Source: Glycera tridactyla
Taxonomy: Eukaryota
Direction: 5' to 3'
DNA length: 64,000 nt
Assembly (NCBI GenBank): GCA_965644265.1
Contig: OZ286460.1
Location: 98,952,001 to 99,016,000, forward strand
Shown here in pieces: positions 1 to 10,116 of the stretch. The notes under the pieces are model-generated. The model did not search any database and was not told the origin of the DNA. It saw only the letters and a list, made by a program, of their open reading frames with translations. Position 1 is the stretch's first letter; each line of letters opens with the position of its first letter. Position numbers and translations under genes: made by a program.

Positions 1-273
1 GAGACAAAATGTTACAAAACGTTAGCAACCGTTGGCTGCAACTAAACAGCCTGCTGGTCCACATTCAAATCATATACTGTTTGTGTTTAGTGTCTTGGAA
101 TTGATTTAGACTGGCAAATATAAGCATATGCTGCAGTGTGTCCAGTTGCAGCTTACAATACCTAACATTTTCTAACGGAAACAGGGTCCCCATATTTTTC
201 TGACAAACTTGAGATAAAGAATATTTGCTCGGGGATAACAATTTCTCGGTTAGCTCAACTGAACAGCCTGCTG
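1..273. mobile_element. Family R1 MITE-like copies (partial 1-56; full about 133-273)
   Basis: Element of about 145 bp with terminal inverted repeats of consensus cagcaggctgttcagttg(c)agctaaca...tgttagctcaactgaacagcctgctg; recurs many times in the window. Confidence 0.7.
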
Positions 274-1443
274 GTGCTTCCAAGCTGGCTCATCTTCCTA
301 TCTCAGCTGGCATTTCAATTTTGCAATTTATACTACTACTCAGGCATAAATTGGTATCCTTGCTTCTATAACAATAGTATACTATATTGTGCTGTATGTA
401 TATAATTCTTCTCATGATATTGCCATTCATGGATTTTGTGATACTACAAAGAAATGATTACAAATGACTGATGAAATTTTACGAAGATCATGGAAGGCTA
501 CATTTTGCCTAATTTGTATCACATCTGTCATATTGATTCTCTTACTATTTCAAAGATGGCTGTCCATACAAAGGAGCAAAGATACAGAAAAATAATACTT
601 TATATGGTTATGTACTATTTAGGCTATTTTGACATTCTTGTGTAGCGAAATTACATATTGCATGAACATGGAATATTTCATCATGCGCTACATTAGCAAA
701 TAAACCTTCCATGAGTGAGATATTACATTGTCCTATGGACTAATCATGTCAGAAGAACTGGCACTGTATAGTATTCCACAAAGACCAAGGTTGTGGAGAG
801 TCACATACAAGCAACAATGCACACAATATTCTACTATACTTCATTCTTTGCATCACTGTCTGAACTGCAGAAGAGAAAGAATGCTCCGGGGGAATGAATT
901 ACTTGTAAATGAATTGACCCAACACCACAGCTTCATATATAAAGACCAAGAGAACATACATTACCAAAAAGACAAAGTACCCTCCCCTTCATGCTAATTT
1001 GTATCAGTAGGCTACTTCACATGATTGAGACCAAACTATTGGATAAATAAGTGACCTCATTTTGACAATACATTGAATGAATTTAGATATCTGATTAATC
1101 AGCTTCTCTGATTATAATAAATAGTCCATCTCCAGAAAATACCAATGGGAAAGCCATGTAAAGATGCCCATCCTGAAGGGAGAAACATATTTGACAAGAG
1201 ACAATGTAAGGTAATAATTGAGGGTAAAAGGACAAGCGACAAGGCAACACAGCGACCTCTTCAAACCTGGAGGGAAGAAAAAGGTGAATTAAAGAACAGG
1301 CGGTGAGATAAGAGACAGCAGGTCTAGTTGTACAATGCAACCAAAACTGCGTCAACTGCACTTTAAACACCCCCGAGTGGCAGGGGTGCCATGCATCGGC
1401 CATCATGCGATGTTGGCTCTTATGACCACCCTCATTACCATAC

Positions 1444-1542
1444 CTCAAAGATGGTATCTTCACAGAAGTTGACAAAGGAGAGCAGCTTTTCTTTCTCTCC
1501 ATCCTCCGTACAGACCTCATGGAGGAAGGCACGTTTGGAGTC
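1444..1542 (-). CDS. RyR: RyR exon 33b (alternative TaF exon) [33 protein letters not shown]
   Basis: 99 nt, tgttgtag| ... GAG|gtatgg, phase 0-0; paralogue of 1615-1713. Confidence 0.93.
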
Positions 1543-1614
1543 CTACAACATCATACACACCCAAACTTGAAAATGAAACTCTTCTCTACAAGTATACAGA
1601 GCATGTTTTCTCAC

Positions 1615-1713
1615 CTCAAAGATTGTGTCTTCACAGAAATTTACAAAGCACTCCAACTTTCCCTTCTCACCACCTTCATTCACGATATTATGAAGGAAAG
1701 TGCGCTTTGACTC
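1615..1713 (-). CDS. RyR: RyR exon 33a (alternative TaF exon) [33 protein letters not shown]
   Basis: 99 nt, ttttttgcag| ... GAG|gtgaga, phase 0-0; matches RyR1 [33 protein letters not shown]. Confidence 0.95.
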
Positions 1714-2553
1714 CTGCAAAAAAGGCCATAGTCATCTCATCCTATCCTTGAAACATTATCACATTAAAAGCATCTCTTCGTATGAAAGGACTGAGCGCTT
1801 ACTTCCTGACATTCAGCTTTCCACTATTTGGCTGAGATTTCAAGCGAATATATTGCAATGATATGGGCAGTAGAAGCTCTTGATATGATAAATGGCAGAA
1901 TGAACTTCATGTGAAGCATCCATCATAAACTGAAGATATAAAGTAATGATGCCTATTGATTAGATTTCGACATCATGATCTTGAAAATGGAGTACAATAA
2001 TTACGTATCATCAAATTTGAAGATTAAGCATTGACCTCAGCCTTATCCATATGTAAGCAGTTGAGACATACTGATGTAACCGTTATCTTCGTGAGCCAAG
2101 TCAAAAAGCAATGTGACAGTGCACATCTACCCATGGGGACCACTCAAGGAAAGTCTGAACCCCACTTACTTTGTCAATGACTCCCCAAGTACTCATGAGC
2201 AGTACATCCCATTTTGGAATGAACATGTAGAAGAGCACCTACACACAGGTATCTGGCAAGAAGTGCATCGGCATGAAATGTCCATCAGATGCCAAAGCAT
2301 GGAAGAGGAATGATATTGCCCAACTACACATGAAGATCTTTCTAAGAAATCTGACTTGGTGCAGCAGTCCTGGAGATACACATGAAGAAATCGGAACTTT
2401 TAGATCAAAGTACAAAAACAAACTGAAGTTAGTTGCATCCTTGCAATATTCTCTGAATACACAGTGGTATGACAAGTATTGAGTAATGAAAACCTTTCTC
2501 CAGCCATAATGCCAGCCCTAATGAGCAGAATGAGTATGGAATGCATGCAATAC

Positions 2554-2710
2554 CTTGATCTGTGGCTTTTCCCATTGATCAATGTGTGTTTGGGTGATTT
2601 CAAAGTAGACCCGCTCAATGCGTCCTGCACCACCCATGATCTCAATGCGACCAAGGTAGGGCTCAAAGTAGTCCAACACACATCTGGCTGTTTCCAAGAA
2701 CCTTTCAAGT
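2554..2710 (-). CDS. RyR: RyR exon 32 (R)[52 protein letters not shown]
   Basis: 157 nt, gttttcag| ... AAG|gtattg, phase 2-0. Confidence 0.97.
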
Positions 2711-2877
2711 CTGAAAACAAAGATAAAAGTGTATAAATGAACAAGAAGAGATGATACAGATCTGCTGTGCACTATTTCCATAAACTGATTCACTAAGCTA
2801 CATCTTACTGGATGAACAAGGACATATTGATGGAAGAAACCTAGCATTATGTTTGATCTGTTGAATATTTGCCAACA

Positions 2878-3090
2878 GCCCTATTCGACTGGTCGGTTTC
2901 GTTGAGTACGGCTGGTCTGTTGACTACGATTCGTATTCGGGTGGTCGCTTAACACTTTTTCGTTGTGTACGATCTCAACGGTCAATTGACTGTGTTGAAC
3001 TCGTTAAATGGAATCTATTCGGCTGGGCTACGGGCGTTGAGTACATATCCGTCAACGCACTTTCAACAAAACCGACCAGTCGAATAGGCC
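2878..3090. mobile_element. CpG-rich MITE-like element with about 26-bp terminal inverted repeats
   Basis: cctattcgactggtcggtttcgttga at 2880 is the reverse complement of tcaacaaaaccgaccagtcgaatagg ending at 3088 (1 mismatch). Confidence 0.75.
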
Positions 3091-3386
3091 TATAGTCCAC
3101 TAGATCCCTCTCAGGTAATGTTCATGTCTGGTATGTCAGTGATGATCAGGATATCTGATTACATCATCTGATATTTACTACTGTTATGGAGGACATGGCA
3201 AATACTGGCTCAATATCTTCAGTATGAGTAGACACTATTAGATGGAAGTGAATGAAGAGAAATATGTTATGAGAACCTCAAAAATATTGAAATCTCATAA
3301 AAACCTCGATAATTCTGATATGGTGAAATATCATATCAATACAATCCAGCAGTGAAGACATTCAAGTGAATGAAGTGAAACTTTAC

Positions 3387-3548
3387 CTTGGCTCATTAGG
3401 CATGTGCTCTGACAGATTGGTGAGCAATACTGCCACATTGAATCCGATATCCTTTGCGGGATTATGGAAACGATCTGTGAACTCATTGAAATCCACCTTG
3501 CCATCCTGGTTAGAATCCACACACATCATGATGTATTCGATCTCCTCA
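3387..3548 (-). CDS. RyR: RyR exon 31, EF-hand 2: EEIEYIMMCVDSNQDGKVDFNEFTDRFHNPAKDIGFNVAVLLTNLSEHMPNEP(R)
   Basis: 162 nt, cccatatag| ... AG|gtaaag, phase 2-2. Confidence 0.97.
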
Positions 3549-4516
3549 CTATATGGGGGAAAAGAGCAAAATATGCATCAAGATCATTCAAACACATGGC
3601 TACTAATGTCTGGAACATCAATAGAAAGTTTCCACATGTGTATATGCGAGGCTTTCCCCATCGCAATTCCAAGCAAAGTAAACTGGGAAAAGTCTAGTTG
3701 TTCTACAATTGTCAGTAATAGTTAACAATCTGACTTCTGGCTGATATCCTCATCAATGTTGACAATCTGCATACATACCTTCGTCGCCGGTCAATGACCA
3801 TCTTGATCAACAAATTGTTACCAATTCCACATGAATATGTTTGGCTGGCAGCTCCACAGCACATACACAGGATCAGCAAATTGCAGGCAATTTGAAAGGG
3901 GCCAAACTAGGTCCTGGTATGATCCTGGATCTTGCATATAATGTATGACCTCCAGTATTTGAAAATAAGAACTCATACACTTGCCACATCTCTGTGGTCT
4001 GGATAAAATTCGCACAAAGATAAAACTGAAACATACCCCAACAAATGAATGGCTGAAAAAAATCAGCAATTTCAAGCTGATCACCCAGGAGATTACTCAG
4101 ATATTAGTTTCTCATCCTTGTGCAAACTATGAGAAGGAGCAAGTAGATGTTTTGGGAGTAAAATGCTATCTACAGAATGAACATCCTGTTTGCTATTATG
4201 CTCGCTTTTATGCCACACTTGGTTAATCAAAGTCATTCATTCGCATGAAATTCAAGAAAAACCCACAAAATACTGGTTGGCAACCATTCTTGTTTTCAAG
4301 CTGCAATGACTGACCCCTCCTCATGCAAAGAGGCATTTTACTGACAATAGATGATTCTTTATGTATACAGGTAGGACGTAGCCATGGTACAGGTTTACTG
4401 CACAAATTTGATCTATAAGCAGTCAAACCAGGGTCTAATTTGCTTTGCTGCTGCTACCTCTTTACCATCATTCTTCATTTCAGTATGTATGTGGAGATAC
4501 ACACATAAGCTATATA

Positions 4517-4676
4517 CAGTCCAACCTCCTCTAAAAACCACTTCACTATAAAGGCCACCCCAAGCTGTGACCTTGGTAATATTTTCAACAGTAAATGACC
4601 TCTCTATAAAGACCACCTCCCTATAAAGGCCACATTTGATGCAACCAAAGGCAGTCTTCATAGAGAGGTTCAACTG
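4517..4676. mobile_element. Family R2 MITE (Tc1/mariner-type, TA target duplication)
   Basis: TA|cagtccaacctc ... gaggttcaactg|TA with internal aaagaccacct repeats; related copies at 10421-10596 and 43619-43779, fragments at 41400-41690. Confidence 0.8.
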
Positions 4677-4970
4677 TATTTCGTGTTACCAAGACATGTC
4701 TGAGCGAAGGCTTTTTATCCCAAAGGTGTACACATACATTTTTTCCACTCACCAACATCTCGTAATCCTTTTCACCAATGAATTCTTGCCTTCCCTCTAT
4801 TAAAGCTATGTTACTTCCTATCACAATGTCACTAAATAACTCCTCTCCAACTATTGGCTGAACACCAATTCTAATCGATTGATGAATTGAAACAATTTCC
4901 GAACGATGGGACTAGTCAATAAGGTCAGGAGTACAACAATAATACTTCATATCCTTATATTAAATGGATT

Positions 4971-5175
4971 GTTTGTTTGTTTAAGTTTAACGTCACTTAA
5001 ACCCACTTGGGTTATATCGGACTGAAAACCTGAAAATGCTGAAGAAAAGAGTCACTGCCTGCCGGGGGCCGTCCCTACTCTTTGCGAAAGACAGCAGTGG
5101 ATCTTTAACGTGCGTCAAGGAAAAGACTCCTATCAGCACGGCCGGCCTTTGATATCCCAGTCGGCATGCACTGGG
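4971..5175 (-). mobile_element. 5'-truncated SINE with (AAAC)n tail and 15-bp TSD, probably Deu/Nin-domain type
   Basis: TSD tatattaaatggatt at 4956-4970 and 5176-5190. The core ttaaagatcc..tttcgcaaagagtaggg..ccccgg resembles the Deu-SINE central domain as I recall it. A second copy lies at about 16097-16280. Confidence 0.65.
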
Positions 5176-6129
5176 TATATTAAATGGATTTATGCTAGGG
5201 TGTGGCATAAAAACCAAGGCATAGTTGTGATGGCACCTTATTTTACTAGGGAGTTGTCCATCAAAAAAAGCAACAATAAAGAATTGAGCATGTTAATATG
5301 AGTACAAGCCATCATAAAATGAACAACACAAGCACTCAGTTAATCTCAATTGACACCCATTAGAGAAGTTCGAGAACCCAGTTAATTCGACTGCACATTT
5401 ATGAAACAGATATGGTCAATATCGCAGTAAAAAAATCTGCAAACACTTGAAAAGACAATTAAATATTAGTGGACATTCATTAAGTGTTCAGTTGAGACCA
5501 AACTACAACTTGGCTTGGCGAAATTACAGCACGAATTAACATCTTTTATCCATGATAACTTTGCTCATACTGTATTTACATGGGTATCCTATTACTGCAA
5601 AAATACAGTCATGTGACATCATTTCATGAACAACATGGATTTTTTTCAGCAGAGTGCCAGGCAACCTCACATAAGAAATTAATTGTATTGGTTGATGATA
5701 TACACAAGACCACATGAGTGTCATGCAGGGCTTCCGAGACCAGCCATACTTCATGGACATGAAAATGCAGTGTGAGCCTCAGAGGGGTGAGTGCCGTGTT
5801 TTTGCATACGAAAACAAATGCCAGTCTACAGAGCCATACATGATGCAAATGTGGGCTTGTTTTTGTCACATAATCATATTAGATATGTAAGATATGATGA
5901 TATATGAATTCGACATGAAATCCATCTTCTCGGATGTGAATAAGCTGAAAAAAGAAAGTGAACAGTTAAGCATACAGTAGGCAGTGGATAATCCAGCCTC
6001 CAATGCTGTCTCTATGGGCCGGATGATTAAGGCTATTAACAATGGTTCCACCCACTGCCATAGGTAGCACTATTCCAGTTGCAATTGTGTCATATTGGGA
6101 CATTTTCCTTTTCAAGAGAATACTCTCCA

Positions 6130-8206: not shown

Positions 8207-8286
8207 TCCGAGTAGATCTTTTGAGCTTCCATTGCTTTCCTGAATTCTTTATGAGAAATAACACCATCCTTGTTGGTGTCAAATTC
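8207..8286 (-). CDS. RyR: RyR exon 30d (EF-hand 1 variant) EFDTNKDGVISHKEFRKAMEAQKIYS(D)
   Basis: 80 nt, ccatgcacag| ... GA|gtaagt, phase 0-2. Confidence 0.95.
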
Positions 8287-8695
8287 CTGTGCATGGAAAA
8301 TAAGGTCAAATGAATAGATATATCAAAGGTAGTTGTATGATCGCGTCCATGATGAGTTGCCGTTTTCACGCAAATGGTTAGGATGAATGAAAGGCAGAAA
8401 GAATGAAGTCAAAAACTTGAAATGAAGTGAAGGTGAATTGGGATAATGAACCAAAATCAATAGATGGATGAACTTGAGTGAGGGTTCCAGGTGTTTCGGT
8501 GCTGGTGGAATCTCTTGACTATCACCTGATGAGAAAAGATTGACCATCACATTGCTGAAATTTATTAGTCCTAGTAAACAAAACACACTATTATAAGTAA
8601 ATATGGATTGGATGAAATAACCTGGATATTACAAAAATAACAAGGTAAAATTGTAACATGCCTAAGGAATGGCTTGAGACTGGTAGGAGACTTAC

Positions 8696-8775
8696 GGTGT
8701 ATACACTTTTTGTGCTTCCATAGCTAGTTTGAACTCTTTATGTGACACAGTGCCATCCTGGTTTGCATCATATTC
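8696..8775 (-). CDS. RyR: RyR exon 30c (EF-hand 1 variant) EYDANQDGTVSHKEFKLAMEAQKVYT(P)
   Basis: 80 nt, atcccaacag| ... CC|gtaagt, phase 0-2. Confidence 0.95.
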
Positions 8776-9364
8776 CTGTTGGGATTGAATGCAAGCAAGA
8801 AAGAAGCAGAGAAAATAAATGAAGGAACACGAAAAAAGGATTGCATGAAAAGAAAAGCCCTGATTGACTAGAAGTGAAGAAAAAATGGGACTGGATGAAG
8901 TATGACACAAGGCTGTATGATTCATCCAAGAAATCATGTACAAAGAGACAGCTGAAATAACTGCATATTCATTTAGCAATGAGAAATGAAGTCAGAAAAA
9001 TAAATAGCATAACATTCATGATAAAGAGAGTTAAAACTCGGCAAATAAATTTAGCAATGAGAAATGGGGTCAGGAAATGAATATCATGATAACGCTCATA
9101 ATATGATGAGCTACCTCACAGATTTCTCAGATAAAAGATCAACCTAGTGGTTCTTCTTTCAAAATGAAAAGGGTGTATGTAAAATATAAATAGTCGGCAT
9201 CAAGATGGAGTTCTTAAAAGTACTTATGTGTATAATGGAATATGAACATCTAGAATAAAAAATGATATTCAATCTGGGGTGGAGATGACTTGACATTTTC
9301 TTCAGAGAAGAAAACACCTAACATGCCGGAATGAGACACGGTATGCCTGCAGGTCATCACTTAC

Positions 9365-9444
9365 GGTGTGTAAGCCTTTAGTTCTTCCAAAGCTAGACTG
9401 AATTCTTTAGGGGAAATAGTTCCATCGAGATTCTCATCATAAGC
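9365..9444 (-). CDS. RyR: RyR exon 30b (EF-hand 1 variant) AYDENLDGTISPKEFSLALEELKAYT(P)
   Basis: 80 nt, ctcacacag| ... CC|gtaagt, phase 0-2. Confidence 0.93.
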
Positions 9445-10036
9445 CTGTGTGAGTGCAAAACAGTACCACCAACAATAGACAACATTGAACCAGTGCAAAT
9501 ACCAATGGCTGCAGATGATATAGAAAAAAATGAGGAAGGAAAGAATCATTAATGATACAGAAACAAGACGTCCATACCAAAAATCAAATAGGTAGCTAAG
9601 TACAAACTAGATGAGTAGTATTACAACAGATGAAAGTACAATATACATATACATACATAAATAAATATAACTAACATCAGCAATGTATCAATCGAAGACA
9701 GAGTCATTATCTTTTATAGACTGATTCCTCCAAATGACCAACCTATTCCTCATAGATGGGAAAATTCCTGAGGTACAGGGATTCTATATCAATGCTCATC
9801 AGCAATGTGTTTAGTTCAATGTCAAATTTGATATGTCTACAGATACTGCAGAATGTTGATGATCATTGTTCACTAACATCATAGCAATTGTTGCTGATGT
9901 TATTTCCATTCATACGATGACTTCATAGATTCAATAGATACAATGTTTGACGGTGTGCAAAGCAAAATATAAAAGACACAGTAAAGATTTACCAACAGCC
10001 AAACAAAGCTCAGCTATGCCACATTTACATACACAC

Positions 10037-10116
10037 CGTTTATACACTTTTTGATTTGCCAGAGCACGCCGAAACTCTTTATACGAAAGTGAACCATCTT
10101 TATTAGTATCAAATTC
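10037..10116 (-). CDS. RyR: RyR exon 30a (EF-hand 1 variant) EFDTNKDGSLSYKEFRRALANQKVYK(R)
   Basis: 80 nt, ctaac..ttattttcag| ... CG|gtgtgt, phase 0-2. Confidence 0.92.

What the first reader, a model, noticed from the sequence alone, without database searches (positions are those of the whole stretch)
1444..1713. Second duplicated exon pair swaps the TaF segment (ATP/caffeine site)
Seen: two 99-nt phase 0-0 paralogous exons separated by a 72-nt intron: [33 protein letters not shown] and [33 protein letters not shown]. Known: by alignment this is rabbit RyR1 4212-4244, containing K4214/R4215 (ATP phosphates) and E4239 (caffeine site). Both copies keep these residues, but the linker differs (NIVNEGG vs EVCTEDG; GKLEC vs EKLLS), including a relocated Cys. 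Inference: these are mutually exclusive exons that tune nucleotide, caffeine or redox sensitivity. The frame does not force exclusivity.
Basis: partly seen in the sequence, partly recalled or inferred. Interest (0 to 1): 0.8.

Follow-up and report, generated by a model that had tools for sequence, protein, structure and literature searches.

The report
Alternative exon pair in worm calcium-release channel
This worm's calcium-release channel gene (a ryanodine receptor) has two old, well-kept copies of the short exon that helps bind ATP and caffeine; the RNA seen here uses only the second copy, so the first is probably a rarely used swap-in version.

Summary
On the minus strand, two 99-nt exons (33a 1713-1615, 33b 1542-1444) lie 72 nt apart. 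Both have AG/GT borders and both align end to end with rabbit RyR1 4212-4244.

New evidence:
- **RNA:** in four RNA-like runs of one study, the long RyR contigs join exon 32 directly to 33b and then to an exon 34 that lies outside the window. 33a is skipped.
- **Conservation:** the same a-then-b pair occurs in six other unlabelled, probably annelid, genomes, with introns of 61-364 nt. Three positions tell a from b in all seven: T/G vs A, I/M vs a small residue, and G vs E.
- **Selection:** between species almost every third codon position varies while the proteins are kept, so both exons are translated somewhere.
- **Distribution:** annotated mollusc and ribbon-worm isoforms carry one type only. 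One annelid-like lineage has a single a-like exon and uses it in every transcript found.

Verdict: this is an old tandem-exon substitution module, not described in the papers searched. 33b is the major form and 33a a conserved minor one. No transcript containing 33a was seen in any species that has both exons, so strict mutual exclusivity and any effect on ATP, caffeine or redox sensing remain inferences. The scan had already followed up the EF-hand exon cluster of this same gene.

The parts
3387..3548 (-). Exon 31 (EF-hand 2 region), constitutive upstream exon
   Evidence: Contig pieces in all four runs cover it, with joint 2710->3387. blastx gives 93% identity to P0191 4196-4250.
2554..2710 (-). 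Exon 32. It ends in ...WEKPQIK, and the last codon is the equivalent of RyR1 K4211.
   Evidence: Joints 2710->3387 and 1541->2553 (cut +1) were seen in X1-X4. Sequence read, translation.
1714..2553 (-). Intron between exon 32 and exon 33a. It begins GUAUUGCAUGCAU, so a UGCAUG sits at +5.
1615..1713 (-). Exon 33a, the a-type TaF exon (motifs ..FLHNIVNE.., ..KGKLEC..). It is skipped in all contigs laid here.
   Evidence: for sequence and RyR alignment. Depth was 0 in bin 1601-1800 in four runs. Orthologues exist in six other genomes, with pN 0.04-0.11 and saturated synonymous sites.
1543..1614 (-). 72-nt intron between 33a and 33b. It has a weak G/U-rich tract before its AG, a possible branch point UUUCAU about 41 nt from the 5' splice site, and ends in an in-frame TAG.
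   Evidence: No stable fold was found (z -0.39).
1444..1542 (-). Exon 33b, the b-type TaF exon (motifs DSKRAFLHE.., ..KEKL..). It is the form present in the RNA contigs.
   Evidence: It is joined to exon 32 in X1-X4, and the loose end beyond 1444 reads MQHATSISAE, which is exon 34.
1390..1395 (-). UGCAUG (Rbfox-type motif) 49 nt downstream of 33b, with a GCAUG at +36. This is a candidate splicing enhancer and is tentative.
   Evidence: The motif lies within 120 nt downstream of b in 4 of 7 species (shuffle P about 0.002). It is not enriched in the window as a whole.
1..1443 (-). Start of the intron downstream of 33b. Exon 34 lies beyond the window's left end, and there is no third TaF copy here.
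   Evidence: The loose end at 1444. tblastn of a and b found only the two exons.

Best explanation
The two exons are an old tandem duplication of the TaF exon of the single ryanodine receptor gene of an annelid. They work as a substitution module: a transcript carries one TaF version.

- **33b** (E at exon position 18, A at 5, a small residue at 10) is the major form in bulk RNA.
- **33a** (G at 18, T at 5, I at 10) is a conserved alternative, presumably confined to a cell type or stage that is rare in the samples available.

Both versions keep the residues that touch the ATP phosphates (K4214, R4215) and caffeine (E4239). Any functional difference would therefore be indirect. It would come from the helix face next to R4215 and from the turn and start of the second TaF helix, which grips the C-terminal domain and couples ligand binding to the gate.

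Shown: the duplication, its age, purifying selection on both copies, skipping of 33a, and use of 33b.

Inferred: that 33a is used at all in this species, that a and b are never joined, that the choice is regulated (possibly through UGCAUG/Rbfox sites), and that the two versions differ in gating.
For: - **Anatomy and RyR alignment:**
- **Transcripts:** the exon 32 to 33b joint and the 33b to exon 34 loose end appear in four runs, with no coverage of 33a. A relative's transcripts are also b-only: L017 is 97/99 nt identical to exon b of L001, and L037 agrees.
- **Conserved pair:** a-then-b pairs occur in L001/2, L004, L006, L007, L008 and L012-14, all 99 nt with AG/GT borders.
- **Coding signature:** variable sites by codon position are 8/4/31 for a and 9/6/31 for b. 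Between species pS is 0.6-1.3 against pN 0.04-0.19.
- **Grouping by type:** exons group by type rather than by species, with one label change, support 90/86, in 99% of bootstrap trees. Positions 5, 10 and 18 are diagnostic in 7/7 species.
- **a-type works alone:** an a-like exon is the only TaF exon in 14-17 kb contigs of another lineage (L040-42). It is in all TaF-bearing transcripts of cluster P0192.
- **Role of the region:** PMC9168041 and PMC8609856.
Against: - No transcript with 33a was found in any species that has both exons. All the RNA evidence is assembled contigs from one study. Contigs drop rare variants, and the tool warns that a dip in depth is no finding.
- The runs are only guessed to be RNA, and their tissue is unknown.
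- The a-b intron is 171-364 nt in four relatives, and no docking-type RNA structure was found. No mechanism that would enforce exclusivity has been identified.
- The ligand-contact residues do not differ between a and b.
Confidence: 0.65

Rival explanations
1. 33a is a relic in this species. 33b has become the constitutive exon and 33a is no longer spliced in, although it may still be used in other annelids.
For: All four runs, and the transcripts of a relative, contain only b. No a-containing transcript was found in any pair-bearing species.
Against: 33a has an intact frame, canonical AG/GT borders and a better polypyrimidine tract than 33b. It is 31/33 identical to orthologues whose synonymous sites are saturated, and it has no lineage-specific odd substitutions. 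A dead exon would not keep this coding signature.
Confidence: 0.15
2. The exons are alternative, but the two TaF versions are functionally equivalent. The choice would be splicing noise or a neutral division of expression between the two copies.
For: The ATP and caffeine contact residues are identical in a and b. b-type exons vary considerably among species (pN up to 0.19).
Against: Type-specific residues (G vs E at 18, T/G vs A at 5, I/M vs small at 10) are held in 7/7 lineages across saturated synonymous divergence. That pattern is not expected for interchangeable copies.
Confidence: 0.12
3. 33a is a cassette exon that is added in front of 33b in some transcripts, giving a channel with a doubled 66-residue TaF segment.
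For: Both exons are 99 nt and phase 0-0, so double inclusion keeps the reading frame. In four relatives the a-b intron (171-364 nt) is long enough to be spliced normally.
Against: No protein or contig with a spliced to b was seen among 173 hits and 25 metagenome loci. A doubled helical hairpin at the clamp on the C-terminal domain is structurally implausible (inference from published RyR structures). Homologous tandem exons normally substitute for one another.
Confidence: 0.05

Closest known systems
Mutually exclusive exon pair in the SPRY2 domain of insect ryanodine receptors (exons a/b; PMC6026295, PMC3342285)
   Same: Both are single invertebrate RyR genes diversified by a tandem pair of homologous exons, conserved across many species, with one version more common.
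   Different: The location is different: N-terminal SPRY2 in insects versus the TaF segment of the central activation core here. The phylum is different. In insects both isoforms have been cloned as cDNA, whereas here only b has been seen in RNA.
Four-way EF-hand 1 exon cluster of this same gene (earlier scan finding s1-314052, window 8207-10116)
   Same: Same gene and same principle: tandem homologous exons in the Ca2+/ligand-sensing core. Together they could give combinatorial subunit types.
   Different: The TaF pair was not found in the annotated mollusc or Lineus isoforms checked here and looks annelid-restricted. I did not re-test the EF1 cluster.
Alternative exons of C. elegans unc-68 (PMC7644089) and vertebrate RyR splice variants
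   Same: Tissue-specific isoforms of one RyR gene made by alternative exon use.
   Different: The unc-68 events are alternative first exons and cassette or length variants in divergent region 2. They are not homologous-exon substitution and not in the TaF domain.
Steric-hindrance mutually exclusive exons (alpha-tropomyosin exons 2/3 type)
   Same: The intron between the two exons is very short here (72 nt) and in two relatives (61 and 71 nt). The candidate branch point lies about 40 nt from the upstream 5' splice site.
   Different: Four relatives have 171-364 nt introns, so shortness is not a conserved requirement. The minimal spliceable intron of this animal is unknown.

Membership tests
Ryanodine receptor gene (TaF segment) | Sequence aligns with the TaF segment of solved RyRs and carries the ATP-phosphate residues (K4214, R4215) and the caffeine residue (E4239) | tested here: met
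   full-length alignment to RyR1 4212-4244 and RyR2 4167-4199. The residues are invariant in all 14 exons. Their roles are taken from PMC9168041 and PMC8609856.
Ryanodine receptor gene (TaF segment) | Neighbouring exons encode adjacent RyR segments in the correct order | tested here: met
   blastx of the window's minus strand gives collinear matches to P0191 residues 2968-4347. Exons 31-32-33b-34 are joined in contigs.
Mutually exclusive tandem-duplicated exons | Adjacent homologous exons of the same length and phase with their own canonical splice sites | tested here: met
Mutually exclusive tandem-duplicated exons | Both copies maintained by purifying selection, with orthologous copies in other species | tested here: met
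Mutually exclusive tandem-duplicated exons | Transcripts carry one copy, never both | tested here: inconclusive
   All contigs and transcripts seen carry b alone and none carries a+b. The data are assembled contigs, which can hide rare forms.
Mutually exclusive tandem-duplicated exons | Each copy is used in some transcripts of the same species | tested here: not met
   No a-containing transcript was found in any pair-bearing species. a-like exons were seen only in transcripts of a single-copy lineage. The search was limited: one study for this species and capped tools.
Steric-hindrance type of exclusivity | Intron between the copies too short for the two splice sites to be used together, and conserved as such | tested here: inconclusive
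   The intron is 72, 61 and 71 nt in three lineages but 171-364 nt in four. The branch point has not been mapped.
Docking/selector RNA-pairing type of exclusivity (Dscam type) | Conserved complementary intronic elements that pair in competition | tested here: inconclusive
   Only weak inverted repeats (75-85% over 14-20 nt) were found in 1200-2700. Folds of the short introns were not better than shuffles. The relatives' contigs are too short to test conservation.
Insect RyR SPRY2 a/b exon pair | Alternative pair located in the second SPRY domain | tested here: not met
   The present pair maps to RyR1 4212-4244, the TaF segment. The insect site is in SPRY2 (PMC6026295).

The most novel reading that the evidence does not exclude
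The a/b choice defines two physiologically distinct channel classes. They would differ in ATP, Mg2+ and Ca2+ activation or caffeine sensitivity, through the TaF clamp on the C-terminal domain. The choice would be set cell-type-specifically by an Rbfox-like factor acting on UGCAUG sites. It would combine with the four-way EF-hand 1 cluster of the same gene to give up to eight subunit types from a single annelid RyR gene, a splice-based equivalent of the vertebrate RyR1/2/3 paralogues.
Probability: 0.2. Interest if true: 0.75.

Novelty: new variant of a known kind. Interest (0 to 1): 0.5.

Why it matters
Invertebrates have a single RyR gene, and how it serves muscle, neurons and other cells is an open question. 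Known invertebrate RyR splice diversity lies in peripheral regions: SPRY2 in insects, and divergent region 2 and the N-terminus in nematodes.

An anciently conserved swap of the TaF segment would place natural variation inside the ligand-to-gate coupling core. This segment supplies the ATP-phosphate and caffeine contacts and grips the C-terminal domain. The three diagnostic positions, equivalent to RyR1 4216, 4221 and 4229, are ready-made, evolution-tested substitutions that could be tried in mammalian RyR constructs.

The finding also gives annotators a concrete pattern that current annelid gene models are likely to miss or to merge.

Tried and rejected
1. **a-type transcripts in protein collections.**
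   - The profile search, the two region searches with full-length RyRs and the fragment search found no spliced a-type fragment from a pair-bearing species.
   - The window species' own long transcripts are not in that collection.
2. **Pair in molluscs or ribbon worms.** Up to 15 listed members per cluster were checked for Haliotis, oysters, Octopus, Mercenaria/Ruditapes, Mytilus, Biomphalaria, Pomacea and Lineus. Each species shows one TaF type only.
3. **RNA structure enforcing exclusivity.** The 301-nt region has z -1.74. The short introns of three species have z -0.39, +0.92 and -0.42. Inverted repeats are weak. No support.
4. **Steric hindrance as a general mechanism.** Rejected as universal, because four relatives have 171-364 nt introns.
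5. **Redox switch through a relocated Cys.** The cysteines are not fixed within either type.
6. **UGCAUG.**
   - Enriched around the pair across species: 12 observed against 2.8 expected.
   - Not enriched in the window overall: 86 against 82.
   - One GC-rich locus contributes five of the twelve, so this is kept only as a lead.
7. **Third TaF copy downstream of 33b within the window.** None.
8. **Vertebrate-type loci.**
   - The metagenome scan also returned vertebrate-type RyR contigs: L024-L031, L035, L036, L038, L039. Some may be human.
   - They appeared only in one automatic motif listing. I then set them aside and did not compare them or search for more.
9. **Taxon names for the unlabelled contigs.** These could not be obtained with the tools. 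'Annelid' rests on earlier scan notes and on the window's RyR being closest to Capitella among named proteins.

Full report
**1. What is in the sequence**

The gene lies on the minus strand. Exon 33a occupies 1713..1615 and exon 33b occupies 1542..1444. Both are 99 nt and phase 0-0.

33a is preceded by a good pyrimidine tract plus AG and followed by GTGAGA. 33b is preceded by a G/T-rich tract plus AG and followed by GTATGG. The intron between them is 72 nt, and its last in-frame codon is TAG.

The copies share 23/33 residues and 70/99 bases but only 16/33 third codon positions, so the duplication is old.

Each exon aligns from end to end with RyR1 4212-4244 and RyR2 4167-4199 among solved structures (E 2.8e-10 for a and 4.5e-7 for b against RyR2).

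blastx of the window's minus strand gives a collinear series of RyR exons covering residues 2968-4347 of the closest full-length relative, P0191. Among named proteins, Capitella teleta is the closest at 70% identity, against 61-64% for molluscs. This fits the earlier scan notes that the genome is an annelid's.

**2. RNA evidence**

That is about the exonic share of the stretch.

Laid on 1-6000, each run has one long contig (2.5-17 kb). In it, exon 31 (3548..3387) is joined to exon 32 (2710..2554). Exon 32 is joined directly to 33b (1542..1444).

Beyond 1444 the contig runs on into sequence that reads MQHATSISAE. This is the start of exon 34, which is not in the window. Depth over 1601-1800, which holds 33a, is zero in all four runs.

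So the dominant transcript contains 33b only. 'Both exons always included' is excluded for the major form.

Caveats:
- These are assembled contigs, which drop rare variants.
- They come from one study of unknown tissue.
- The runs are only guessed to be RNA, although the spliced joints show that they are.
- The tool warns that dips in depth are not findings.

**3. Is 33a a real exon?**

A profile of the two exons was searched against 1.84 billion representative proteins. It gave 173 hits, many of them ORF fragments called on genomic contigs of unlabelled animals.

Fetching those contigs showed the same arrangement in six further lineages. An a-like exon is followed by a b-like exon, each 99 nt with AG/GT borders.

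| Locus | Intron between a and b (nt) |
|---|---|
| L001/L002 | 61 |
| L006 | 71 |
| L008 | 171 |
| L004 | 292 |
| L012-L014 | 307-364 |
| L007 | 350 |

In every case the upstream copy is the reciprocal best match of 33a and the downstream copy of 33b.

Across the seven lineages three positions are fully diagnostic.

| Exon position | a-type | b-type | RyR1 equivalent |
|---|---|---|---|
| 5 | T or G | A | 4216 |
| 10 | I or M | V, C, T or A | 4221 |
| 18 | G | E | 4229 |

In a tree the exons separate by type, not by species. One label change is needed, with support 90/86, in 99% of bootstrap trees. There are only 33 columns, so the finer branching is unresolved.

Variable sites by codon position are 8/4/31 for a and 9/6/31 for b. 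Pairwise synonymous differences between species are saturated (pS 0.6-1.3), while pN is 0.04-0.11 for a and 0.04-0.19 for b.

This is the signature of translated sequence under purifying selection, and it is at least as strong for a as for b. 33a in the window carries no unusual substitutions and is 31/33 identical to two orthologues.

**4. Distribution and which form is expressed elsewhere**

*Single-type species.* Annotated isoform sets show one TaF type per species. This holds for Haliotis, oysters, Octopus, Mercenaria/Ruditapes, Mytilus, Biomphalaria, Pomacea and the ribbon worm Lineus. By this evidence, and unlike the EF-hand 1 cluster reported earlier for this gene, the TaF pair is not shared with molluscs or ribbon worms.

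*Single-copy annelid-like lineage.* One lineage has a single, a-like exon (G18, I10, C22, but A5) in genomic contigs of 14-17 kb. These contigs span from the EF-hand exon to the transmembrane region (L040-L042). All seven TaF-bearing transcripts of cluster P0192 carry that exon. An a-type TaF is therefore sufficient as the only version.

*Another single-copy lineage.* A lineage with the 'NEKIE' motif is also single-copy within 1-2 kb contigs.

*Transcripts from pair-bearing or b-type lineages.* All of these are b.
- The window species.
- L017 and L037. L017 is 97/99 nt identical to exon b of L001 and is spliced to exons 32 and 34.
- P0191, L015 and L016.

No a+b product was seen anywhere.

**5. 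How it most likely works**

*Shown:* an old tandem duplication, both copies kept as coding sequence, 33a skipped and 33b used in the RNA available.

*Inferred:* 33a replaces 33b in a minority cell type or stage.

The ligand-contact residues are invariant in all 14 exons:
- K4211, the last codon of exon 32.
- K4214 and R4215, exon positions 3 and 4. The triple K-to-S/R-to-S mutant loses ATP activation (PMC8609856).
- E4239, exon position 28, the caffeine contact (PMC9168041).

The type-specific differences lie next to R4215 (position 5), one and a half helical turns further along the first helix (positions 9 and 10), and at the turn and start of the second helix (position 18, Gly against Glu). 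That placement rests on published RyR structures and was not modelled here.

The plausible effect is therefore on how the TaF hairpin grips the C-terminal domain. That would change how strongly ATP, Ca2+ or caffeine binding is passed to the gate, rather than changing binding itself.

**6. What enforces the choice is unknown**

In the window, 33a has the better 3' splice site yet is skipped. This argues for active regulation.

The 72-nt intron has a candidate branch point about 41 nt from the 5' splice site, which would fit steric exclusion. However, four relatives have introns of 171-364 nt.

No convincing RNA pairing was found.

UGCAUG occurs 49 nt downstream of 33b (1390-1395) and within 120 nt downstream of b in 4/7 lineages. 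Twelve copies lie in the a-b introns plus 150 nt downstream of b, against 2.8 expected (P about 2e-4). The motif is not enriched in the window as a whole, and one locus contributes five copies. An Rbfox-type regulator is a lead only.

**7. Comparison with what is known, and novelty**

Homologous-exon substitution in RyR is known from insects, but there it lies in SPRY2 (PMC6026295). C. elegans unc-68 varies in its first exon and in divergent region 2 (PMC7644089).

Three paper searches combining RyR with mutually exclusive exons, tandem exon duplication or annelids returned nothing on the TaF segment.

I therefore class this as a new variant of a known kind. It is a real, conserved exon pair in a functionally central place, with its alternative use only half demonstrated.

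**8. Housekeeping**

The metagenome scan also returned vertebrate-type RyR contigs (L024-L031, L035, L036, L038, L039), some possibly human. After one automatic motif listing they were set aside and not analysed further.

Noticed in passing
window 4400-5200 (also 2877-3100): Summed contig depth is very high (up to about 28,000) in all four runs. Dozens of contigs at 90-95% similarity lie here, with many loose ends. This is an abundant, transcribed interspersed repeat inside a RyR intron. It has no Rfam family or tRNA match.
   Followed up: partly
window 2544-2549 (minus strand): A UGCAUG sits at +5 of the intron that follows exon 32 (GUAUUGCAUGCAU), directly at the 5' splice site that must choose between 33a and 33b.
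   Followed up: no
L040:3500-13800, L041, L042: These are genomic contigs of 14-17 kb from unlabelled samples. They carry a compact RyR 3' half (EF-hand exon to TM4-6) with a single a-like TaF exon. They could serve as a single-copy comparison genome for the duplication.
   Followed up: partly
P0001 (93-aa ORF fragment, mollusc-type exon): Directly after a mollusc-type TaF exon, the intron reads through a partial second copy of the ..F.N.CED.IF motif. It may be a remnant of an independent partial duplication in another lineage.
   Followed up: no
P0175 (Capitella teleta RyR model), TaF region: The deposited model has V in place of the first residue of the TaF exon and V in place of the M that starts exon 34. 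This suggests mis-set splice sites. The Capitella locus should be re-examined for a second TaF exon.
   Followed up: no
window 1302-1451: A depth-2 contig in run X1 runs unspliced across the 5' splice site of 33b into the downstream intron. This shows that very low-depth contigs are retained in these assemblies, which makes the complete lack of 33a coverage somewhat more meaningful.
   Followed up: no
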